Positions 2,969 through 19,272 of a DNA stretch of 64,000 nucleotides are shown one piece after another; positions within the stretch are counted from its first letter, which is position 1, and each line of letters begins with the position of its first letter. The DNA is taken from the NCBI GenBank assembly GCA_904063045.1, contig CAJFCJ010000021.1, positions 62,001 through 126,000 of the forward strand, in the 5' to 3' direction. This stretch comes from Dimorphilus gyrociliatus. Taxonomy: Eukaryota > Animalia > Annelida. The translations under genes and the position numbers were made by a program. The notes under the pieces were generated by a model. That model was given only the letters and a program-made list of their open reading frames with translations. It did not search any database and was not told the DNA's origin.

Positions 2969-5900
2969 TTAATCTTCTTTGATTTTCGTTTTCTGATTTT
3001 CAGCACTCTCTAGGAATCTGGCTAAAATTCCCAAAAGAGCGAATATGGTGAAAAGAACGGAGAGTATGTTGGTTATTCTGTAGAGTGAGGCTAAGCCATA
3101 GATGAAAATTATATGTCCACCTATATAGAATAATCCTGAAGCAATATCAATAAATTCACCAGATAGTGGTCCTTTTAGAGATGGCAAATCAGCCCAAACT
3201 AAAAGTGAGACACTAACGCATACAGCAACACACGGTGTTCTCCAAGGATCAACTGTTCCAAATATCCCACGTACCAAATGAATCAAAGACGGGCTCGTTA
3301 ACAAGCTAATAATGACTAGCATGTATATTAATAGAATTCGGAGTTTATGACGTTTAATATCTTCTGCAACATCGCGATTTTCTCTACAAAAGATATGTCG
3401 TAATAGAAGAGATGTAACAGTTATGAGAACTCCTAAGCTTCCACAAGTAAAAGCGGCAATAGGAACACTGATAAAATGAGTTACGATTACTAAATACCAT
3501 ATGAAACTATCAATCTTATTATGTCCAATTAGTCCTGAAAATTTTCTGACAATCCATGAAAAAATTTCCAAACAATTCGAGGCAATAAAGAAAGTACATG
3601 ACAAAATCGCTGTACCTAATAAGAAATTATACATAAACAAGGCAGTAAACCACAGGCCTCTTTCATCCATGTCAAAAGAATCGGGAGGAGGAATAGATAT
3701 TTTTTGAAACAACTCCCTTGAATCTTTTGTTCCAAGCGTCCAGTTAGCCACGAATGTTATTGGTAAAATTTTAAGAAAATGAGGCCAATTGTAAGATTTC
3801 AATGGTTTTTCCTGAGAACTTGGCTGACAAAGTCTACGACATTCGTCGGCAATTAAAAATGAAAGAATGGCAATCATTGCAGAGAGGCAATTAACAGTAT
3901 AGAATCTAAAGAATTGGCCAAGTAATTCCACAAAAGCTAATTGTATACCAATGGTATATTCACATTGAGGGTTAAGATATAAGTGAACCTGAGCACTTAA
4001 ATTCCATTGGGGTGGTTTCGATACAGGTAATCTCACAGTAATAGTTGAATTTGCATCTTTTTCCAATTCGTCATAGGAATCGTCGCTTATCCAAGGTATA
4101 TGAATTTTTGAGAGAACATTTCGGTCATCTGCATTATTGCAGTTAAGAGTTGTTATATAAATTTTGTAAACGTTCATTATATGATCAATCGATGTAAGTG
4201 TTAAATTGTAGAAAATAGCATTTTTCTCTGTCTTCTCTACTAATGTTTGATAAGAAAAAAAAGTTGAAATTAACGGCACAAATGCCTTTGGTAAGCTCCA
4301 GACAACAGATCTTTTATCAGGGTTGAATGCTTCTGCATAAACATGAACGTCTCTCGAGGCTTTTGGTATAATAGTCACTATTGACGAAAATTTTGCTATT
4401 TCATCAGAATTTAGCTTTATAACTTTCAATTCATTAGACGGCACTAGTTCTGCATATGGAGATAAATTTTCTAATTTATCACAAGAACTATCCAATAGAC
4501 ATCCACCCAAATAATTTTTAGCTTTTAAATTTTGCGTAAGAATGATAAATGATGCTTTTTGAGTAATTTTCGTTGCGAAATATCTATTAACATTAACTTC
4601 TTTTCTGTTATATCTCCATGAGGATTTAGGTCGCATTTCAGTTTTAACGTTTGCTCCTAGTTCGATAAGTCTATTATAGTTTTGCCGATAAGTCTTCGAC
4701 CCAGAATTCTTATAGAAATGATGTAGAATAACTTTACGTTTAAAAACTGGATTTACAGCGAACTTCTTTGTCTTCTTATCAACCATATCAATCATTGCCC
4801 TAACTGTAGCCAAGACAATTTGTTTACACCAAACGTGGCATCTATGATCGGTGGAAACCCATCCTCTAGGTACAGATTTTGTCTGTTTTATTTCAAGAGT
4901 ATAAATTCATACTGAAGTCATATTGATTAAAGATAAAAACTTACATTAGTATCCCAGCTAGTATCAAAGGCTACAAGCTGAATAAAATATAACGTTCAGT
5001 ATAATGTACGTCTGTCTCTCTCTCCCTCTATTAGTTAAATAGTATTGTAGAAATTTAGAACTTACCCCTCTTAAGCTAACGAGATCTCTTCTTACTTGAA
5101 TATCTCTGAAACCACCAGCAGTTGAGAAAACGGACGTTTTCAATAAAGTTGAATTGCTTTTATTTGTCCAAAATTCATTTACTCTTCTATAAAATTCAGC
5201 CAATTCATAATCAAGAGCAATAACAGGCATTTGATGAGGTGTTGCCTGGGTAAAAATTGTGTGAACTTTCTCATTTTGAAAGCCTGGTATAGTAAATAGG
5301 GCTCTGGCCACCATTCCTCCCATAGAATGACCGACTAATACAACGCTTTTAGTCGAAGTGTATAACGATAATATTTTATTAATGGCCGCTTCTGTAAAAG
5401 CTGTTTGTCGTTGTAGTGCATCGCCAACAAATGCCGATAGTTCCTCGTTAAAGTCGACTGAATAGAAATCAAAATGGAATGGAAGACTCTCGTCCAGCCA
5501 TTTCCTATAAGCAACAGACCCTAGTGATCTAACTTGTTTATGACTACCATCGTTGCCAGGAATGAAAAGCACAGGAATTCCCGACATTCGGAAATTTCGG
5601 TGCTCTCTAGCGTAATCCCCTTCGCCATATAAATATAGACCATAGGTTGGGAATCGTTCCTTAATATCATCTGTCATCGGTATCGGCTGAAATAATCAAG
5701 AGTAAACAATCCATATTTAGCATGTCATTTATTTATTGCTGCTAAGCCAACTGCATTATATACCATCCCTGTCATATATTTTTACTACAGGGATAAATGA
5801 AATAAATGACACTATTCAATAATGTATGATATACTAAGTGCCTTGTAAACCATGTAGGCCTACTATACAGGTGGTGCTTACACAATTAAACAAAATTTAA

Positions 5901-9551: not shown

Positions 9552-9771
9552 TTTCCTTTTTTTTAATATTGTCGTGTTGTTAACGTGATGGCACAAGAAT
9601 AAAAATTTAGAACGATATTGGCGATAAAAAATCTAATATCTTATCAGGGAGAAAATTTACTTAGGTTTTAGCCTAAAATGCAAGATATCCTAAATCCAAA
9701 GGAGATAGTGTGTATTTATAATTATTTTAATCAGCAAACAGTGGCGATATATTAAACGAGAATGAGTTACT

Positions 9772-12357
9772 TTAATGTCTTGGTTTTTTCGTTGGGGGCG
9801 GCATATCATTAGATCTCCATCCGTTGTGTCGAATGAAAGTGAGGAGACAATTCAGGGTAACGGGATTTCTTATAGAGTTCACCACAGCTATAAAAATAAA
9901 TACGTAAGCAAAATTAAGATTGTTATAGGATTTATCTATGTATATATCTATTCACCAGTGGCAGTTTCGTAGCTATTAGGGAAGGATTTATCTTTTCTCT
10001 CTCTAAGAAATTTCCATTTACCTCCTCCACGATCTAACACTTCCCAGGTACATTCTATGATTTTGTTGTTATATTCACGAAATTCTTTCGGACACTGTAA
10101 CATAAATGACAGATAGATTTTTTACAAAAGTTTGATATTTTATCAATATTACTTTCATGCTGCAAAATGGTGGATGTAGACCTCCAACGAATAAATGAGC
10201 AGTTTTTTCAGGAGGACAACCTTCTCTCTTTTCAACAACAATTTTAAGAAGAAAATCAACAGAGTTCAATTCTGGGGGTTTCCATTTTAAGATAAGATGC
10301 GTTCGACCACCTTTATAGACCTATATAGAAAGAATAAATCTGTTTCTTATCGATGGAAACAGTCAATCTACAAACCCATTCAAAAGGCTGAAATATTAAA
10401 CCATCCGTTTCGTGTGCTACTGCTTTAGTAAATTCTTCTCTGAAGAATCTTTCGGCGTACGTAATATCATGAAATTCTTTGATTCTTATTCCGAAAGGTT
10501 CACTTTCTCGAATTATTCGTCTCTCCTCCATGGCAACCGTCCTGGGACCTATAAGTTCCCTTTGAATACAAATTTCACGCCGCCCAAAATCGCATCTTCC
10601 AACTGGTTTTGACTATTTTAGATAAAAGAAAGTTGGGTAAGACAAATAATATTAATATAAAGTACATGATACCAGTTTATGAAAGTTGCGTTAAAAACTA
10701 ATAACTAGTAGAAAAAATCATAAAACTAACCTCAAATTGCACGATGTCGTAAATGAGAAAACGTGGAATTTTCTGACCTTCATGCTGATCCACAACTAGT
10801 TCCTGATGAAAGATATATATATTTGTAAAACATATTATTATATGTTCAACGAAAAATTTCTTACACCATCCACAAGAGTATCAAATACAGAGTCTTCAGG
10901 AAATTTTCTTCTCGGAAAAGTTAAATTATTTACTTTAAAGACAGTGTTATCTCTATCGAACATAAAAATTTGTTCTTTCCCTTTTATGTACATTAAATAT
11001 CTGAAGCAGTTCATTTCAAATAAACAAATCGAATTATAAAGATATTTAAATATATGCATGTGAAATTTACCTAACTCCATCAGCTTTCCAGCTGACTTTG
11101 TATCGTTTTTCACCCAAAAGACTAATATTTTGTCTATCCATAGATACAGGCTGGGCTCCAGCAAACCCATTCCTAACGTTGAAAAAACAAACTATAATAC
11201 AATTATAATGACTTTACGCTTTTTAACCTCTCATAACTGCATATTATTTTAACCTCGTTTTGCAATCTTGATACTTGCTCATAATCTTTAAATTGTTCAA
11301 CTTGCGGAATATCTAAGCCTTCAACAAAAACAGCATTGTCTTTCCGGTTTTGTCCTCTGTTTTTTTTTCTTGAAGCAATTGGTTTTCCATCATCATCCCT
11401 ATCGTTATCATCAAATTCTATGATAAATAAAAATATTTATTTCTGTTTATCGCTGAAATTTGTTACAGAAACACAGACCAACATGCCAATCGGGAAGACT
11501 GGGAGCGTTTGGAGGTGTTTCTTCTGGATAATACCGTTTATATAACTCATTGATGTAGTCTTGCTTATATATTCCAGGACTTCTATTCTCAATGAAAAGG
11601 GACAATGCTGCTTCCAAACTTGAATAAAATTAGGAAATTTACAATAAAAGTTTATAAATACAAAATATTTAAAACATACTCCCAATCCCTTTTATCAATT
11701 AAATAACAAACAATCAAAAATCCAGTTCTGTTAAATCCGTGTGTGCAATGTACACCTGAAATTTACAATTAGAGTAAATTTTTAAAGCAATTGAAATTTT
11801 TGCGAAACAGACCAATGACTTCATTAGGTCGATTGGTTACAACTGAATCAACAGCTGTCATAAAAGCCTCCGTTTCTTCAATTGTTGGTGCTTGACCATG
11901 TCTGGCAGCAAAAAATTACTTATCTATTTGTATTTTAAAGATTTCAATTAATATACCCTCTGCATTTGATTTTAATATATCCACAGTCAAGTTCTTCTCT
12001 CACTTTTTTCGAATCATAAAATCTTGTAGTGAATGTCAAGTCTAGTAAAATTCCCATTTTCCTCTGTGATTAAATTTATTAGAAATTTTGTTAAAGTGAT
12101 AATTTGAATCATACTTTCATCTGCTTCATGGAATTAAAAATCATCCTTAAATTAAAACGATATTCTTCAGGAACCTGATCATCATATCTTTCATCCAAAG
12201 GGGTTTTCATCGGTAAGAAGAGGTCTGTAAACAATAGACTTAAAAATTCTGGTGGGTAAAATTCTTTGCAAAGTTAACCATCTATTAAGTTTCCCTTCCG
12301 GGGGCAACGTAACCATCTCGGAGGCAATGGTAATTCTGCATTAATTCCTTCAGCCAT
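9772..12357 (-). CDS. RNGTT: mRNA capping enzyme (RNA triphosphatase + guanylyltransferase), intact copy, ~12+ exons
   Basis: Start [16 protein letters not shown]; phosphatase motif [12 protein letters not shown]; GTase motif [23 protein letters not shown]; ETDGLIFQP; [14 protein letters not shown]; [16 protein letters not shown]. Confidence 0.96.
10654..10701 (+). pseudogene. PACRG: Remnant of the PACRG C-terminal coding tail inside an RNGTT intron
   Basis: Reads [15 protein letters not shown] and is identical to 14925-14972. It lies antisense within the 118-nt RNGTT intron 10730-10613. Confidence 0.92.
10654..11209 (+). repeat. Duplicated block, copy 1 (identical to 14925-15480)
   Basis: Manual alignment at offset 4271 shows no mismatch over 556 bp. 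The ORF-track translations of the two copies are also identical. Confidence 0.95.
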
Positions 12358-12889
12358 ATTTCAACAAGATATTTTATTACAATTGATAGATTTTTGAGAA
12401 CGAATTGCACGAAAAATAGAACAAGTTGAAATAAGGCGTCCAAAAAAGTTTCAACCGTTAGCTGATTATCAAAAAAAAGGATTGCATTAATCCAAATTTA
12501 AAAAGTTTTTCTTTAAGATAATATTCTGAGGATCAACATACATCTCTATGTGTACATGGAGGCTATCCCTAAACTTTTAACATGGTTATATTCTGAAATG
12601 ATAAGAGCAGAAGATGGTTGATTATCCGAGTATCACTCAGGAAAGCTTTAATTGAATTCACAGATATGTCTTACAATAAGATGATATAGTGACGCCATTT
12701 TGTTTATTCCCTATAAAAATTTTCTATCGAAAGCGAATATAGTTCGTGTATATTTCGTGGTGCGGTGTCTTTATTAAACACTTGTTTATATCAGAATTTC
12801 TTTGGATTGTATTTAAAATATAAGACTTGCTGATTGCAAAGAAAGTAAACATCAGAATTATAAAGTCTTAATACTAATTATTTATAAAG
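12358..12889. promoter_or_regulatory. Bidirectional RNGTT/DDX54 promoter, copy 1 (now serving intact RNGTT)
   Basis: Lies between the RNGTT ATG (12357, -) and the DDX54-fragment ATG (12890, +), and contains a YY1-type CGCCATTTT motif. Duplicated at about 15484-16001. Confidence 0.7.
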
Positions 12890-13238
12890 ATGGCCTCGAA
12901 TATGAGGCGGATAAAGAAGCGAAAGCGCAATAATGAGGAATCGGAGGAAAACTTTACTGTTGTAAAACAAGTTTGTATACCTTCTAATTATCAAATATAT
13001 GTTAAGAAGGAACAATATTAAAAATATTTTAAATAATTGATAATATTTATATATAATATTGATATCCACAAAGGAGAGAATTAAAAAAAGTTGATTTGTA
13101 AATTGAATTTTAAAGATTTTAATTTGCTACTCAAATAAAGATAAATAATGATTGTAAAACGTGAATATCTATAAGTGTTTCTTTTCATTTCAGGATAAAA
13201 TATTCAATTTAAACCAAAACATTACAGAAGTGGAAGAT
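12372..13238 (+). repeat. Duplicated block, copy 1 (98.7% identical to 15484-16350)
   Basis: Manual alignment at offset 3112: 11 substitutions in 867 bp. Confidence 0.95.
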
Positions 13239-13241
13239 TGA
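12890..13241 (+). pseudogene. DDX54: Truncated DDX54 5' fragment (exon 1, intron 1, start of exon 2)
   Basis: [18 protein letters not shown]|[15 protein letters not shown] ends in TGA (13239-13241) created at the rearrangement junction. Confidence 0.9.
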
Positions 13242-13535
13242 TAGTTTCATAAGGTATTTAGTAATCGTAACTCATTTTATCAGAGTTCCTATTGCCGCTT
13301 TTACTTGTGGAAGCTTAGGAGTTCTCATAACTGTTACATCTCTGCTATTACGACATATCTTTTGCAGAGAAAATCGCGATGTTGCAGAAGATATTAAACG
13401 TCGCAAACTCCGAATTCTATTAATATACATGCTAGTCATTATTAGCTTGTTAACGAGCCCGTCTTTGATTCATTTGGTACGTGGGATATTTGGAACAGTT
13501 GATCCTTGGAGAACACCGTGTGTTGCTGTATGCGT
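13234..13535 (+). pseudogene. PGAP1: Inverted 302-bp fragment of the PGAP1 last exon (source 3517-3216)
   Basis: Reverse complement of 3216-3517 with 6 substitutions. Confidence 0.95.
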
Positions 13536-13850
13536 AACGGGATTTCTTGTAGAGTTCACCACAGCTATAAAAATAAATACGTAAGCATAATTTAGATTAT
13601 TATAGGATTTATCTATGTATATATCTATTCACCAGTAGCAATTTCGTAGCTATTAGGGAAGGATTTATCTTTTCTCTCTCTTAAGAAATTTCCATTTACC
13701 TCCTCCACGATCTAACACTTCCAAGGTGCATTCTATGATTTTGTTATTATATTCACGAAATTCTTTTCCATTTGAATACAAAGTTCTCTACGCCCAAAAT
13801 CGCATCTTCCAACTGGTTTTGACTATTTTAGATAAACGAAAGTTGGGTAA
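13534..13850 (-). pseudogene. RNGTT: Degenerate RNGTT 3' fragments (copies of ~9857-10088 and ~10555-10640), with a ~468-bp internal deletion and a 1-nt insertion
   Basis: Manual alignment: about 9 substitutions plus 1 indel in ~232 bp, and 6 substitutions in ~85 bp. Confidence 0.92.
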
Positions 13851-13941
13851 AGCAAATTAGTATGTGATTGGCCTAATTGTATTTCCTAGCGATGACATCG
13901 AACGAGTGGATATTATTACAAGTACATATTTCAATGGCATA

Positions 13942-13954
13942 ATCGCTAAGCAAC
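13942..13954. promoter_or_regulatory. RFX X-box-like element upstream of PACRG
   Basis: ATCGCTAAGCAAC (reverse complement GTTGCTTAGCGAT), about 125 bp before the ATG of an axonemal gene. Confidence 0.55.
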
Positions 13955-14079
13955 TACGCACGCGGAAAGTGTGTTTATTGATTTTTCCTCTCATTCATCT
14001 AGACCTGTCGAGCGTCACCAGGTAGCATCTCCATCAATATAAGTCAGAAGAAGCATAATACCTGATCGGTTGTCCTAAA

Positions 14080-14972
14080 ATGGCATATAAGACGCCAAGA
14101 GGGCAAACAGACAGCTGTGGAACTCTAAGAAAGGAACGAATAAAAAGGAAACAGGTATATTCTCACTTCCTGTACATGCTGACGTGTTGTTAATACTGCG
14201 ATTTGTTATATAAATGAATTTCAGAATGATGGGCCATCAAGATGTGGCGCCTTTATGAGTTCTAAGTGCGAAACGCCCACAGAATTCATTAGATTTTACA
14301 AAAGAGGTGATTTGCCTTTAATTGTTGAACGAAATGACGTTAGATCAGGTGTAAAGCTTAAATGGAAGGTACAGATTGAGCAACTAGACTATCATCATTA
14401 TCTACCAATATTTTTTGACGGTTTACGTGAGACCACTGAACCATACGGATCTATTGCAGAAAGAGCAGTGCACGATATGCTTGAACATTGCCCTCACAAG
14501 ACAATCTTTTGTATTCCTCAATTAATAATTCCTTTGAAAAGTATCTATTAACTCTATCTTAATATAATGTCAACGTATGTAATGAATTCAATTGCAGAGG
14601 CATTAGAAACTCGCAAGGTTCGCATAGTTTGTAAGACTTTAAAGGCCATTCAACATTTAGTTGAGAGTGGAGAATCGATAGGAGAGTCCTTGGTTCCCTA
14701 TTATAGGCAACTTTTACCTGTTTTCAATGTCTTTAAAAATAAGAACGGTAAAGTATCGGATTGATAAGAAAATATTGGGATTTACATACAATTTTTTCAT
14801 GTGAATTGCAGTAAACACAGGAGACGCTATTGATTATGGACAACGTAAAAATGAAAATATGGGAGATTTAATTGATGAAACATTACAGCTTTTAGAGAGA
14901 ACAGGTGGTCCTGATGCTTATATAAATATAAAGTACATGATACCAGTTTATGAAAGTTGCGTTAAAAACTAA
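14080..14972 (+). CDS. PACRG: Parkin co-regulated gene protein (axonemal inner junction); exons 14080-14154, 14225-14540, 14598-14747, 14812-14972
   Basis: [91 protein letters not shown]. Splice phases are compatible. Confidence 0.95.
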
Positions 14973-15486
14973 TAACTAGTAGAAAAAATCATAAAACTAA
15001 CCTCAAATTGCACGATGTCGTAAATGAGAAAACGTGGAATTTTCTGACCTTCATGCTGATCCACAACTAGTTCCTGATGAAAGATATATATATTTGTAAA
15101 ACATATTATTATATGTTCAACGAAAAATTTCTTACACCATCCACAAGAGTATCAAATACAGAGTCTTCAGGAAATTTTCTTCTCGGAAAAGTTAAATTAT
15201 TTACTTTAAAGACAGTGTTATCTCTATCGAACATAAAAATTTGTTCTTTCCCTTTTATGTACATTAAATATCTGAAGCAGTTCATTTCAAATAAACAAAT
15301 CGAATTATAAAGATATTTAAATATATGCATGTGAAATTTACCTAACTCCATCAGCTTTCCAGCTGACTTTGTATCGTTTTTCACCCAAAAGACTAATATT
15401 TTGTCTATCCATAGATACAGGCTGGGCTCCAGCAAACCCATTCCTAACGTTGAAAAAACAAACTATAATACAATTATAATAACTTT
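14973..15486 (-). pseudogene. RNGTT: RNGTT middle exons, copy 2; exons 1-5 including the ATG are deleted (~1159 bp)
   Basis: Identical to 10702-11209, then joins directly to the RNGTT upstream region (12372 onward) through a TTT microhomology at 15484-15486. Confidence 0.92.
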
Positions 15487-16001
15487 TATTACAATTGGTA
15501 GATTTTTGAGAACGAATTGCACGAAAAATAGAACAAGTTGAAATAAGGCGTCTAAAAAAGTTTCAACCGTTAGCTGATTATCATAAAAAAGGATTGCATT
15601 AATCCAAATTTAAAAAGTTTTTCTTTAAGATAATATTCTGAGGATCAACATACATCTCTATGTGTATATGGAGGCTATCCCTAAACTTTTAACATGGTTA
15701 TATTCTGAAATGATAAGAGCAGAAGATGGTTGATTATCCGAGTATCACTCAGGAAAGCTTTAATTGAATTCACAGATATGTCTTACAATAAGATGATATA
15801 GTGACGCCATTTTGTTTATTCCCTATAAAAATTTTCTATCGAAAGCGAATATAGTTCGTGTATATTTCGTGGTGCGGTGTCTTTATCAAACACGTGTTTA
15901 TATCAGAATTTCTTTGGATTGTATTTAAAATTTAAGACTTGCTGATTGCAAAGAAAGTAAACATCAGAATTATAAAGTCCTAATACTAATTATTTATAAA
16001 G

Positions 16002-19000
16002 ATGGCCTCGAATATGAGGCGGATAAAGAAGCGAAAGCGCAATAATGAGGAATCGGAGGAAAACTTTACTGTTGTAAAACAAGTTTGTATACCTTCTAAT
16101 TATCAAATATATGTTAAGAAGGAACAATATTAAAAGTATTTTAAATAATTGATAATATTTATATATAATATTGATATCCACAAAGGAGAGAATTAAAAAA
16201 TGTTGATTTGTAAATTGAATTTTAAAGATTTTAATTTGCTACTCAAATAAAGATAAATAATGATTGTAAAACGTGAATATCTATAAGTGTTTCTTTTCAT
16301 TTCAGGATAAAATATTCAATTTAAACCAAAACATTACAGAAGAGGAAGATGAGGATGAAAGTGTTGTAACATCGGATATTCGAAAGAATATTCGAAATCA
16401 AAATCGAAAAATGAAAAAATCGGGTGGTTTCCAAGCTATGGGTATAACTTGTTTCATCTTTTTTTATTGAATCATTTTAATTGACAGACTGTTTATGGGA
16501 AATTAATTTTTTTCAAGGGCTGTCTAGGGGTGTCTTTAAAGGGTTAATTAGAAAAGGCTATAAAGTACCAACTCCAATTCAGAGAAAGGTAATTTCCTCT
16601 TATTCTCTCATTCAAAATTCAAAAAAACTATTATCACAATATTTTCCAGACAATTCCATTGATTTTGGATGGTAAAGATGTTGTAGCTATGGCTCGAACA
16701 GGATCTGGAAAAACAGCAGCTTTTCTTTTACCTATGTTTGAAAAACTAAAAGCAACATCTGCTAAAGCTGGTGCAAGAGGCTTAATTTTATCGCCCACCA
16801 GAGAATTGGCCCTACAAACTTTACAATTTACTAAAGAATTGGGAAAATTTACAGGTCTTAAAGCCGCTGTAATATTAGGTGGTGATAGTATGGAAGAACA
16901 GTTCTCCGTTATACACCAGAATCCTGATGTGTATGTTTAAAATGGAATTCATTAAATTCAGTATATTTAGTCAATTTGTTTTTTGTTATTTCTCTGATCA
17001 ATAGAATAATAGCCACGCCCGGAAGATTTATGCACGTTTGCGTTGAAATGGAATTGAAATTAAATTCTATAGAATATGTTGTGTTCGATGAGGCTGATAG
17101 ACTATTTGAAATGGGTTTCGCAGAACAATTAAAAGAAATTTTAGCTAGACTACCAGAAGATAGACAAACACTCCTTTTCTCTGCGACTTTGCCAAAAATT
17201 TTAGCCGAATTTGCTAAAGCAGGTCTACACGAGCCTACACTTGTAAGATTGGATGTTGAGACAAAATTAAGTGAAAACCTGCAAACCAGCTATTACCAAT
17301 GTCGACCTGACGATAAGGAAGCTGTTCTATTATATTTGGTTCAAGAGGTTGTTAAGCCATCAGAACAATGTGTTATATTCGTTGCTACTAGACATCACGT
17401 TGAATATCTAAATATGGTATATAAAACTATACTTAAAATCTACAAGTTCAATAAAACATTTTTCTATACAGATATTAAGAGAAGCTGGTTTAAAAGTTTC
17501 TTATACTTATTCATCACTTGACCCTGCAGCTAGAAAGATTGAGGTGGCCAAATTCAGAGCCCGTAAAACAAACTTCCTCGTAGTAACTGACTTAGCCGCT
17601 AGAGGAATAGATATCCCTACTTTAGATCATGTCATCAACTATAACTTTCCAGGGAAATCTAAACTATTTATACACAGAGTTGGTAGGGTAGCAAGAGCCG
17701 GTAGATCTGGATGGGCTCATTCGTTAGTAGCGCCAGAGGAAATGCCTTATGTACTAGATTTACATCTATTTTTGGGAAAACCCCTGAAACTTTACCAAGG
17801 CGGAAAAGAAGAAGAGAATGTTATGGGAACAGTCCCGCAAACAATCATTGATGAATGGGATCAATCAGTTAGGCGTTGGAATGAAAAGACAGATATTGTA
17901 TGTGAATAATACAAACTGCAAAATGTTCATTATAAATTGATTTTGTCTCTTCTTTTATAGGAAAATATGAAAAATGTGACGATCAATGCTTATAAACACT
18001 ATGTGAGAACTAGGCCTCAACCCTCAGGAGAGTCTATCAAAAGGATGAAGGAATTATTAGATGTTACTATTTGTCATCATCCTATATTCGGTATGATAAC
18101 GCTTTAAATTAGTTGACATATTTCTTTAAAACTTATTTCTTTCTCTTTACTAAAAGTAAATTCAACTAATAGCGAAGAAATAGAAAAGGAGAAATTAATA
18201 AAAAAAATGAAACAGTTTAAACCACCAGCAGTAAGTTAAATCAGTAGACTAGTAATGGAATTCGATTCATTTATTGTTCATTTCAAATAGACAATCTTTG
18301 AAATTCATAAGAAGAGAAATGCGTCTGTTATAGAAACCATGAAACAAAAAAGGGAAAAACACGCTGAAATAATCGAAGCAAATGCAAAGAGAAGCGAAGA
18401 AAGAAAAAATAATCAATTGAATGAATCCATTTCTTCTGATAGAGGATCTGTCCTTGATCAAGATGTTGATTTAGAAAATACATTTGGATCTATCATTGCA
18501 CCAAAACCTAAAATGAGGAGGGTTTTCAAGAAAGATGACGAAAGTTTCGTTCCTTACAAGCCAAAAGACTTTGCCAGTGAAAATGGGTCAGAACAAATAA
18601 CATTATATGAGCATATGATATATAATTACTAATAAATTATTTATCTACAAATTTAGGCTAAGCTTAAAGAGCAGTTTCGAGAAAGATGCCTCTAACGCCA
18701 TGATGGACCTAATTGGGGATGATCAGGATATAGGACGAAAACTTAATAATCATAAAAAATGGTAAAATGCTTAAAAATAACATATATATTTTTCATGTTA
18801 TACTAAGTTTAATTAAAAAATTTTAGGGATAGAAAGAAGATGAAATTTGTTGGAGAAACGAACGATAAGAAGAAAATTAAAACGGAAAGTGGTCAATGGA
18901 TATCTTCCACGTACAAATCGAAAGTATACAAAGAATGGTTAGATAAAACAAAAATGAAGTCAAGAGAGGAACACGCTGATATGGACAATGACGATCGAGT

Positions 19001-19272
19001 AAAAGCTCCTAAGAAGGCAAGGTCGGGCAGATTGCAAGTTTTAGGAGGCGAATCCAAATTTAAAAGTTTGTTTTTTTCATTCAGTTATAGCTGATTATTT
19101 AATCGTATGTCCTTGTTTTCCAGGAGGTTTTCATACAAGGCGTGAAGAAACTAAAGCCAATAAGAATAAAAGAGAATTAAAGAGGAAAGATGAAATTGTT
19201 AAAGAACGAAGGAAGAAAGCCAATCTTCAAGCTCGTATGAAACATCGTGAAAAACGAAAAAGGAAACGTTAA
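16002..19272 (+). CDS. DDX54: DEAD-box RNA helicase DDX54/Dbp10 (multi-exon)
   Basis: [84 protein letters not shown], and the Dbp10 C-terminal [18 protein letters not shown]. Confidence 0.96.

What the first reader, a model, noticed from the sequence alone, without database searches (positions are those of the whole stretch)
9857..16350. Tandem duplication with reciprocal loss has un-nested PACRG from an RNGTT intron
Seen in the sequence: two tandem copies of an RNGTT-DDX54(5') unit. Copy 1 keeps intact RNGTT, but one intron (10730-10613, 118 nt) holds only the last 48 nt of PACRG coding sequence, and its DDX54 is truncated. In copy 2 the homologous intron (15001-13823, 1179 nt) contains the complete antisense PACRG gene with its X-box promoter, DDX54 is intact, and RNGTT is destroyed by ~468-bp and ~1159-bp deletions. 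The offsets agree: 1179-118 = 1061 = 4271-3210. Inference: the ancestor had PACRG nested in RNGTT. Duplication of ~4.4 kb followed by complementary deletions separated all three genes with no net change in gene number. This would be a nuclear duplication/random-loss event that resolves a nested gene.
Basis: partly seen in the sequence, partly recalled or inferred. Interest (0 to 1): 0.9.

Follow-up and report, generated by a model that had tools for sequence, protein, structure and literature searches.

The report
Duplication un-nests PACRG from RNGTT
In the miniature annelid Dimorphilus gyrociliatus, a 4.4-kb tandem duplication followed by complementary deletions has separated the cilia gene PACRG from the intron of the mRNA-capping-enzyme gene RNGTT, where a related species still keeps it; this is a rare, fully readable record of how a nested gene pair is taken apart.

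Summary

**Structure.** Self-alignment shows two tandem copies, 9857-13238 and 13534-16350.
- Copy 1 has an intact, spliced 586-aa RNGTT. Its 118-nt intron keeps only the last 50 coding nt plus the stop of PACRG. It also carries a 42-codon DDX54 stub.
- Copy 2 has an intact, spliced 233-aa PACRG inside a 1179-nt relic intron. The RNGTT around it is dead: 468-bp and 1159-bp deletions, no ATG, a frameshift. The full DDX54 follows.

**Decisive new evidence.** A 26-kb contig from a related species (L001, about 73% nt identity, same gene order) has a single locus. There, intact PACRG sits in the homologous intron of intact RNGTT. The nested state is therefore ancestral.

- The copies are joined by a 302-bp inverted copy of a PGAP1 exon with 5- and 2-nt microhomologies, a replication template-switch signature.
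- DDX54 copy 1 and the RNGTT copy 2 tail were cut by the breakpoints themselves, so only part of the loss was a free choice.
- Copy 2's deletions may have arisen with the duplication.
- A 556-bp block without any mismatch implies gene conversion.
- The 3' RNGTT remnant is still transcribed.

**Residual doubt.** Assembly artefact remains possible (about 6%), because HaploMerger2 was used and no single long read was seen.

The parts
9857..13238 (.). Copy 1 of the duplicated unit: RNGTT minus the end of its last exon, the shared promoter, and DDX54 exon 1 to the start of exon 2.
   Evidence: Blocks A-D in self-blastn; differences listed.
9776..12357 (-). Functional RNGTT coding region: 14 coding exons, 586 aa, ATG at 12357. 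5' UTR exons reach about 12742.
   Evidence: Spliced model gives an open 586-aa ORF with phosphatase and guanylyltransferase motifs. Introns are seen as CT..AC joints in X5, X3 and X7. Pfam mRNA_cap_enzyme and mRNA_cap_C.
10613..10730 (-). 118-nt RNGTT intron, the former host intron after a 1061-bp deletion. The junction is at 10647-10649, with one unmatched base at 10648.
   Evidence: GT..AG on the - strand; junction alignment.
10649..10701 (+). Relic of PACRG: the last 50 coding nt plus the stop codon. It differs from 14920-14972 only at 10653.
   Evidence: Three-way alignment with copy 2 and with the L001 PACRG 3' end; difference list.
12890..13241 (+). DDX54 5' stub: exon 1 at 12890-12970, a 223-nt intron, then exon 2 cut at 13238 with a stop at 13239-13241. 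This makes 42 codons.
   Evidence: Sequence read directly. The 12970>13194 GT..AG joint in X5 and X3 cannot be assigned to one copy.
13234..13535 (+). Junction filler: an inverted 302-bp copy of a PGAP1 exon segment (source 3216-3517), with 6 differences. Microhomology is AAGAT at the left junction and GT at the right.
   Evidence: The source gene is PGAP1 (P0036, 100% identity). Filler-specific letters occur in RNA-type contigs of X5 and X3. An X7 contig, 13345-13559, crosses the right junction by 24 nt.
3216..3517 (-). Source of the filler, inside the long PGAP1 exon (ORF 2969-4813).
   Evidence: Loose ends of contigs match 3186-3215 and 3518-3547.
13534..16350 (.). Copy 2 of the duplicated unit.
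13534..13822 (-). RNGTT 3' remnant: 31 nt of the last exon, a 68-nt intron (13565-13632), a partial exon 14 with a +1 insertion at 13681, and 57 nt of exon 12. The 468-bp deletion junction is at 13766. It is transcribed and spliced.
   Evidence: frameshift with two premature stops; 6 of 7 exonic differences are derived in copy 2. X1 DNA contig 13693-13820 bridges the junction. Copy-2 letters at 13637, 13641, 13723 and 13728, and the 13564>13633 joint, are seen in X5 and X3.
13823..15001 (-). Relic host intron (1179 nt) that contains the whole PACRG gene. It is homologous to the 1132-nt intron 9594-10725 of L001.
13932..14031 (+). PACRG promoter block, about 93% identical to L001 against a poorly conserved background. 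It holds the X-box-like GTCACCAGGTAGC at 14014-14026.
   Evidence: Alignment A1. A motif scan finds one match, with one mismatch, at the same place in both species.
14080..14972 (+). Functional PACRG coding region, 233 aa. Exons: 14080-14154, 14225-14540, 14598-14747, 14812-14972.
   Evidence: Pfam ParcG. Spliced contigs X5:16 and X3:12 run on to 15031. The public annotation has a 233-aa ParcG product here.
15002..15486 (-). RNGTT remnant exons 11, 10 and 9 with their introns. This is part of block C and is identical to copy 1 except at 15481. PACRG mRNA overlaps it in antisense by at least 30 nt.
15484..15486 (.). Junction of the 1159-bp deletion (TTT microhomology). The deletion removed the RNGTT start codon and coding exons 1-7, which hold the whole triphosphatase domain.
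16002..19269 (+). Functional DDX54: exon 1 at 16002-16082, a 223-nt intron, exon 2 from 16306. DEAD, Helicase_C and DBP10CT pieces follow.
   Evidence: Colinear with L001 13260-16340. Not modelled exon by exon.

Best explanation
**Ancestral state.** In the ancestor, PACRG lay antisense inside the intron between coding exons 10 and 11 of RNGTT. Its 3' end ran into the neighbouring RNGTT exon. DDX54 lay head-to-head with RNGTT.

**The duplication.** In the Dimorphilus gyrociliatus lineage, a 4.44-kb segment was duplicated in tandem. It ran from inside the last RNGTT exon to the start of DDX54 exon 2. The mechanism was a replication template-switch event. The new junction holds a 302-bp inverted copy of a PGAP1 exon from 10 kb upstream and has 5-nt and 2-nt microhomologies.

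**State at birth.**
- DDX54 copy 1 was already a stub.
- RNGTT copy 2 lacked its last 27 codons.
- PACRG was present twice.

**Later changes.**
- A 1061-bp deletion removed PACRG from copy 1 but spared both splice sites. The working RNGTT now has a 118-nt intron there.
- RNGTT copy 2 lost 468 bp and 1159 bp, including the ATG and the triphosphatase domain, and then gained a frameshift. These deletions arose either in the same event or later.
- Gene conversion later homogenised the 556-bp block C. Its tract runs to within 5 nt of the two deletion junctions.

**Net result.** The locus has one RNGTT, one PACRG and one DDX54, now side by side.

**Shown:** the structure, the intactness and splicing of the working genes, the nested outgroup state, the microhomologies and the decay of copy 2.

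**Inferred:** the order of events, the template-switch mechanism and the gene conversion.
For: - **Block structure and offsets:**
- **Working genes:** intact RNGTT of 586 aa and PACRG of 233 aa, both spliced in RNA-type contigs. The public annotation lists one product of each of the three genes here.
- **Outgroup L001:** single copy, all RNGTT exons open, PACRG in the homologous intron. The same sequence occurs in several runs.
- **PACRG relic** in the copy 1 intron aligns with the PACRG 3' coding end of both copy 2 and L001.
- **Junction microhomologies** of 1-5 nt at all five junctions.
- **Filler diagnostic letters** occur in RNA contigs of X3 and of the independent 2017 run X5.
- **Right filler junction** is crossed by 24 exactly matching nt in X7. 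That contig is about 3% diverged and comes from a coral metatranscriptome.
- **DNA run X1** has contigs that bridge the 468-bp junction and both edges of the PACRG segment.
- **Decay of copy 2:** 6 of 7 exonic differences in block A are derived in copy 2, including a frameshift.
- **Uneven divergence:** A+B has 19 differences in 326 nt, C+D has 13 in 1434, Fisher p = 2.5e-7.
Against: - No single read or contig spans copy 1, the filler and copy 2. Read laying returned only Logan contigs, which break at the repeats.
- The left filler junction (13233/13234) was not shown directly.
- The X7 bridge across the right junction is 24 nt, under the tool's 31-nt rule.
- The assembly pipeline included HaploMerger2 and SSPACE-LongRead, which can create tandem artefacts.
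- In X1 the shared blocks are not at twice the depth of the unique ones. They fit two copies only after allowing for GC bias, on eight data points.
- The order of the deletions is not resolved.
- Only one outgroup lineage was found.
Confidence: 0.85

Rival explanations
1. One-step origin. Copy 2 was born defective. The same multi-switch replication event that made the duplication and the PGAP1 insertion also skipped 468 bp and 1159 bp. RNGTT copy 2 was therefore never functional. Only one later loss, the PACRG deletion in copy 1, was needed. The outcome is then not reciprocal random loss.
For: - All copy 2 junctions carry the same kind of short microhomology as the two filler junctions.
- The short segments between junctions have the highest mismatch density: B 9.7%, A 4.3%, filler 2%, against C 0.35% and D 1.3%. 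Error-prone synthesis near template switches would give this pattern.
- The duplication breakpoints already truncated RNGTT copy 2 and DDX54 copy 1.
Against: - The differences in A are spread along the segment and are mostly what a decaying pseudogene would accumulate.
- The X7 lineage (about 3% diverged) appears to share the junction. If so, the event is old enough for ordinary decay to explain A and B, and the near-identity of C needs gene conversion anyway.
- There is no direct test here.
Confidence: 0.35
2. Assembly artefact. The two 'copies' are alternative haplotypes of one locus that were concatenated during haplotype merging or long-read scaffolding.
For: - HaploMerger2 and SSPACE-LongRead were used.
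- No record spans the whole stretch, and contig depths do not show a clean twofold excess for the shared blocks.
Against: - A mis-join would not create a 302-bp inverted copy of PGAP1 with six private differences and microhomology at both ends.
- The filler version occurs in the RNA contigs of X3 and of the independent X5. X7, from another sample and lineage, crosses the filler/RNGTT junction.
- Each haplotype would lack an essential or conserved gene (RNGTT or PACRG).
- The window has no N.
Confidence: 0.06
3. PACRG was inserted secondarily into the intron of copy 2. The PACRG-like 50 nt in copy 1 then arrived by gene conversion.
For: Block C, which contains the relic, does show signs of gene conversion.
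Against: - The outgroup has PACRG in exactly this intron of a single-copy RNGTT, with a conserved promoter block.
- The 35 nt on the other side of the copy 1 junction also match the copy 2 intron.
Confidence: 0.01

Closest known systems
Duplication followed by complementary or reciprocal gene loss (duplication-degeneration; divergent resolution of duplicates)
   Same: A duplicated segment in which each copy keeps a different member of the original gene set. Gene number ends unchanged.
   Different: - The two genes were physically nested, so the losses change gene architecture rather than just location.
- The duplication is a 4.4-kb local tandem event, not a whole-genome one.
- Part of the 'loss' was imposed by the breakpoints.
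- All five junction scars are still readable.
Loss of nested gene structures in vertebrates (LRRTM/alpha-catenin; PMC3933685)
   Same: [quoted passage not shown] It proposes that lrrtm4 was once nested in a ctnna copy that became inactive.
   Different: - There the event is ancient and is inferred from presence and absence after genome duplications.
- Here both products of the duplication lie side by side, with the dead host exons, the guest relic and an outgroup that is still nested.
Tandem duplications with templated insertions at the junction (replication template switching: FoSTeS/MMBIR, microhomology-mediated repair). Named from general knowledge.
   Same: Head-to-tail duplication, 2-5 nt microhomology, and an inverted insertion copied from about 10 kb away.
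   Different: This is a fixed or high-frequency event in a wild-type animal genome, read only from sequence. No polymerase or repair pathway was tested.

Membership tests
Tandem segmental duplication by template switching | Two head-to-tail copies of one segment at one locus | tested here: met
   Blocks A-D are colinear, with offsets of 3112-4271.
Tandem segmental duplication by template switching | Microhomology and a templated insertion at the novel junction | tested here: met
   AAGAT and GT microhomologies flank a 302-bp inverted copy of 3216-3517.
Tandem segmental duplication by template switching | The junction is present in independent sequence data | tested here: inconclusive
   - The X7 contig crosses the right junction by only 24 nt.
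- The filler version is present in X3 and X5.
- The left junction was not displayed.
- No spanning long read was seen.
Ancestrally nested host-guest gene pair | An outgroup has the guest inside the homologous intron of an intact single-copy host | tested here: met
   In L001, RNGTT exons flank PACRG. The intron is 9594-10725, with all host exons open and all four PACRG exons present.
Ancestrally nested host-guest gene pair | A relic of the guest remains in the now-empty host intron | tested here: met
   10649-10701 equals the PACRG 3' coding end plus its stop.
Reciprocal (complementary) loss after duplication | Each copy keeps a working version of the gene that the other copy lost | tested here: met
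   - Copy 1: RNGTT open and spliced, PACRG deleted.
- Copy 2: PACRG open and spliced, RNGTT without ATG, with two deletions and a frameshift.
Reciprocal (complementary) loss after duplication | Both copies were functional at birth, and the losses were independent later events | not testable with these tools
   The breakpoints truncated DDX54 copy 1 and the RNGTT copy 2 tail. The copy 2 deletions may be part of the founding event. Intermediate haplotypes would be needed.
Interlocus gene conversion between the copies | A tract far more similar than the neighbouring paralogous sequence, introns included | tested here: met
   C has 2 differences in 567 nt, against 19 in 326 for A+B (p = 2.5e-7). 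The 556 nt without a mismatch span exons and introns.
PACRG (Pfam ParcG) | Full-length match to the family profile | tested here: met
   Profile positions 1-183 are covered, E 1e-28 to 8e-18.
RNGTT (bifunctional metazoan capping enzyme) | Cysteine-phosphatase P-loop plus a guanylyltransferase KxDG domain and the C-terminal OB domain | tested here: met
   [10 protein letters not shown] and KVSWKADG are present in the 586-aa model. Pfam finds mRNA_cap_enzyme and mRNA_cap_C. The annotated product also hits DSPc.
DDX54/Dbp10 | DEAD-box helicase core plus a DBP10CT domain | tested here: met
   PF00270, PF00271 and PF08147.
RFX/X-box-regulated cilia gene promoter | An X-box (GTNRCC N0-3 RGYAAC) close upstream of the start codon, bound by RFX | tested here: inconclusive
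   There is one match with one mismatch, 54 nt upstream of the ATG. It is identical in L001 and lies inside a conserved 100-nt block. Binding was not tested, and the RNA contigs start upstream of it.

The most novel reading that the evidence does not exclude
The un-nesting was favoured by selection, not drift.
- In the nested state, the PACRG 3' end ran antisense through RNGTT exons, which set up a convergent-transcription conflict.
- The duplication relieved that conflict.
- The dead RNGTT exons beside PACRG are now kept as its 3' UTR and terminator, homogenised by gene conversion, and as a divergent promoter flank.
- The remnant's transcript, which carries 302 nt antisense to PGAP1 mRNA, has acquired a regulatory role in trans.
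Probability: 0.1. Interest if true: 0.7.

Novelty: new variant of a known kind. Interest (0 to 1): 0.5.

Why it matters
Surveys of nested genes report many gains and very few documented losses of old, conserved nested pairs. The route by which such pairs come apart is mostly inferred.

Here every step is preserved at one 6.5-kb locus:
- the founding junction;
- the dead host exons;
- the guest relic;
- a relative that is still nested.

This gives a concrete, datable example of un-nesting by local duplication and complementary loss. It also gives a natural experiment: PACRG and RNGTT expression can be compared between the nested species and D. gyrociliatus to measure host-guest transcriptional interference.

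Three deletions of 0.5-1.2 kb sit in a duplicate pair only about 2-6% diverged. That shows how fast redundant DNA is removed in a genome known for compaction (PMC7854359).

It remains a single-locus case, not a new principle.

Tried and rejected
- **Placozoan origin.** I first guessed this from AT-richness and the coral-sample hit. It was rejected: the PGAP1 ORF is 100% identical to a Dimorphilus gyrociliatus protein.
- **Exact-sequence look-up of the PACRG exon-2 ORF**, to find independent assemblies of the same species, returned nothing on record.
- **Searches with the PACRG and RNGTT exon ORFs** found only one related lineage. All its contigs are 100% identical to each other. No intermediate species was found.
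- **Scan of metagenome contigs** for the 24-nt right-junction sequence gave no match.
- **Copy number from X1 contig depth** was inconclusive. Depth tracks GC content, and shared blocks look two-copy only after a rough GC correction.
- **The RNA joint 13822>15002**, the apparent splicing of the 1179-nt relic intron, cannot be assigned to copy 2. The 28-32 nt next to the junction are identical in copy 1, so it is not evidence that RNGTT copy 2 is transcribed across PACRG.
  - The depth bookkeeping suggests little or no RNA across the 1159-bp junction: 5% of RNGTT or less in X5, none needed in X3.
- **Read-through from the DDX54 stub into PACRG** is not supported. X5 and X3 have zero depth inside 13565-13632.
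- **Full-length protein queries** for PACRG, RNGTT and DDX54 were not possible. Spliced products have no reference, and I did not type them in.
- **Literature search** for PACRG together with RNGTT found nothing relevant.

Full report
**Observation**

Self-alignment of the window shows four colinear direct-repeat blocks:

| Block | Copy 1 | Copy 2 | Identity |
|---|---|---|---|
| A | 9857-10088 | 13534-13766 | 95.7% |
| B | 10556-10647 | 13766-13857 | 91% |
| C | 10649-11215 | 14920-15486 | 99.6% |
| D | 12372-13238 | 15484-16350 | 98.7% |

- The offsets (3677/8, 3210, 4271, 3112) imply that 468 bp and 1159 bp are missing from copy 2, and 1061 bp from copy 1.
- The same search shows something this finding did not mention. 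Positions 13234-13535, between the copies, are an inverted 98% copy of 3216-3517.

**Genes**

- Pfam identifies ParcG on the + strand at 14183-14969. It identifies the capping-enzyme catalytic and C-terminal domains on the - strand. On the + strand from 16593 it identifies DEAD, Helicase_C and the DDX54-specific DBP10CT domain.
- I used the intron joints seen in RNA-type contigs and GT..AG sites for the four 3' introns. With these, copy 1 gives an uninterrupted 586-aa RNGTT. It has the phosphatase P-loop [10 protein letters not shown] and the guanylyltransferase motif KVSWKADG, an ATG at 12357 and a stop near 9776.
- PACRG in copy 2 is a clean 233-aa, four-exon gene. That matches the length in the public annotation.
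- The 118-nt intron 10613-10730 of the working RNGTT keeps both splice sites. It contains 10649-10701, which equals the last 50 coding nt and the stop of PACRG.
- The DDX54 fragment in copy 1 is a 42-codon stub that stops three bases after the junction.
- RNGTT in copy 2 lacks the start codon and the whole triphosphatase half. It also lacks 355 exonic nt of the guanylyltransferase and OB region. In addition it has a +1 insertion at 13681, with two premature stops between the deletion junction and that insertion.

**Organism and assembly**

- The long PGAP1 ORF is 100% identical to a Dimorphilus gyrociliatus protein on contig CAJFCJ010000021.1 of GCA_904063045.1.
- That assembly was built from PacBio RS II reads with PBcR, Quiver and Pilon. 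It was then passed through HaploMerger2 and SSPACE-LongRead (PMC7854359). A haplotype-merging artefact therefore had to be considered.

**Is the tandem structure real?**

Read laying returned only Logan contigs, which break at the near-identical blocks. No record spans the region. Even so:

- DNA run X1 has contigs with no mismatches across the 468-bp junction (13693-13820) and across both edges of the PACRG segment (13807-14954). It also has copy-1 contigs through 10015-10610.
- The contig breaks at 13230 and 13253 are where a k=31 graph must branch if both the copy-1>filler path and the alternative paths exist. The alternative paths are DDX54 of copy 2 and the PGAP1 locus.
- RNA-type runs X3 (same study) and X5 (2017, a different organism label) carry a 283-nt contig identical to the filler version at all five diagnostic sites. 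The X1 contig there carries the PGAP1-locus version. Loose ends match the PGAP1 flanks. Both sequences therefore exist.
- X7 is a coral metatranscriptome holding a relative. Its contig here is about 3% diverged. The contig, 13345-13559, matches exactly for 74 nt up to its end, including 24 nt beyond the filler/RNGTT junction.
  - The true PGAP1 continuation is completely different.
  - This is under the tool's 31-nt rule, but it is hard to explain otherwise.
- An assembler would not invent an inverted 302-bp insertion with six private substitutions and microhomology at both ends.
- Depth is unhelpful. It follows GC content, and the paper itself mentions strong GC bias. After a rough correction the shared blocks are compatible with two copies.

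I put the artefact reading at about 6%.

**Ancestral state**

- The PACRG exon-2 ORF finds a 90%-identical ORF in Logan assemblies. Its 26-kb contig, L001, carries PGAP1, a NudC-like CS gene, a P450, RNGTT, PACRG and DDX54 in the same order. It aligns with the window at about 73% nucleotide identity.
- L001 is single-copy. Its segments align first to copy 1 (to 10618), then to copy 2 (13934-15445), then to copy 1 again (11294-12387), then to DDX54.
- All 14 RNGTT coding exons are open in L001. All four PACRG exons lie in the intron 9594-10725, which is homologous to 10613-10730 and 13823-15001.
- Identical contigs occur in three sibling runs. A fifth run shows the same gene arrangement in its gene calls, although its DNA could not be read.
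- A 100-nt block upstream of PACRG is about 93% conserved and contains the X-box-like GTCACCAGGTAGC in both species.

It excludes a secondary insertion.

**Mechanism**

All five junctions have 0-5 nt of microhomology:

| Junction | Microhomology |
|---|---|
| DDX54 > filler | AAGAT |
| Filler > RNGTT | GT |
| 468-bp deletion | T/TT |
| 1159-bp deletion | TTT |
| 1061-bp deletion (copy 1) | 0-1 nt, plus one unmatched base |

- A tandem duplication with an inverted templated insertion copied from 10 kb away is the classic signature of replication template switching. This is general knowledge and was not tested here.
- The duplicated unit ran from inside the last RNGTT exon to DDX54 exon 2, 4.44 kb in all. 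Consequently DDX54 copy 1 and the RNGTT copy 2 tail were truncated at birth. Only PACRG was duplicated whole.
- Whether the two copy 2 deletions belong to the founding event or came later cannot be decided here (rival at 0.35).

**After the duplication**

- Divergence is very uneven. A+B has 19 differences in 326 nt and C+D has 13 in 1434 (p = 2.5e-7). C has 556 nt without any mismatch, across exons and introns. Its only two differences lie within 5 nt of the flanking deletion junctions.
- This fits gene conversion after the deletions.
- Polarised with L001, 6 of 7 exonic differences in A are derived in copy 2. Copy 2 of RNGTT is therefore decaying, while copy 1 is conserved.

**Present-day expression**

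- RNGTT copy 1 and PACRG are spliced in X5, X3 and X7.
- PACRG mRNA contigs run at least 59 nt past the stop codon, into the dead RNGTT exon 11. The first poly(A)-like hexamers come about 290 nt downstream. PACRG therefore overlapped host exons in antisense, and the relic exons probably serve as its 3' UTR.
- Copy-2-specific letters at 13637, 13641, 13723 and 13728, and a - strand splice of 13565-13632, appear in X5 and X3. Their depth is about 45-180% of that of the copy-1 version at those sites. The 3' RNGTT remnant is therefore transcribed, and the filler with it.
- There is little or no signal across the 1159-bp junction. An X5 contig is continuous from 13795 into PACRG. I infer a divergent transcript starting near the PACRG promoter rather than read-through from the duplicated RNGTT promoter. 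This is not shown.
- Un-nesting is thus demonstrated for the coding genes and is likely, but unproven, for transcription.

**Comparison with what is known**

- Surveys stress that nested pairs are gained by insertion and rarely lost.
- The LRRTM/alpha-catenin study lists old nested pairs that lost the host or the guest. It proposes that lrrtm4 was once nested in a ctnna copy that died (PMC3933685).
- I found no description of PACRG nested in RNGTT. I also found no nested pair resolved by a local tandem duplication with its scars preserved. The searchable library is incomplete.

I class this as a new variant of a known kind: duplication with complementary loss, here applied to a host-guest pair.

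**Verdict**

| Item | Assessment |
|---|---|
| Observation | confirmed |
| Confidence in the main explanation | about 0.85 |
| Interest | 0.5 |

It is a clean and instructive example, and it opens a test of host-guest interference. It is a single locus and the principle is an expected one.

Noticed in passing
window 13234-13535 (- strand transcript) versus PGAP1 at 3216-3517: The filler is PGAP1-sense on the + strand, so the - strand RNGTT-remnant transcript carries 302 nt that are 98% complementary to PGAP1 mRNA. RNA-type contigs of X3 and X5 keep the filler version rather than the PGAP1 version. This suggests the filler RNA is at least as abundant as PGAP1 mRNA.
   Followed up: partly
window 9776-9887: The public annotation's RNGTT product is 550 aa and ends at about 9948 by reading into the intron after exon 14. 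The RNA-supported last exon (36 aa, ending ...PPPTKKPRH, conserved in L001) is missing from it. The duplication breakpoint at 9857 lies in this unannotated exon.
   Followed up: partly
window 14973-15031 and 15002-15073: PACRG mRNA contigs extend at least 59 nt past the stop into the relic of RNGTT exon 11. There is no AATAAA or ATTAAA before 15263. In the nested ancestor, the PACRG 3' UTR must have been antisense to RNGTT coding exons. L001 has an ATTAAA overlapping its stop codon, which the window lacks.
   Followed up: partly
run X7 (coral metatranscriptome), laid on window 10864-14987: A wild or aquarium coral sample contains transcripts of a Dimorphilus-like worm about 2-3% diverged from the reference. 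It has synonymous changes in RNGTT and a different PACRG 3' UTR after 14987. It is a possible source of a sister lineage for this locus.
   Followed up: no
window 13783-13790: Four substitutions fall within 8 nt, 17-24 nt from the 468-bp deletion junction. They may be one complex mutation linked to the junction's formation.
   Followed up: no
window 3347-3499 versus 13252-13404: Where the X7 filler contig is informative, it has the PGAP1-locus state at 13365 and 13404 and the reference-filler state at 13403. At least two of the six filler/PGAP1 differences therefore arose after that lineage split.
   Followed up: no
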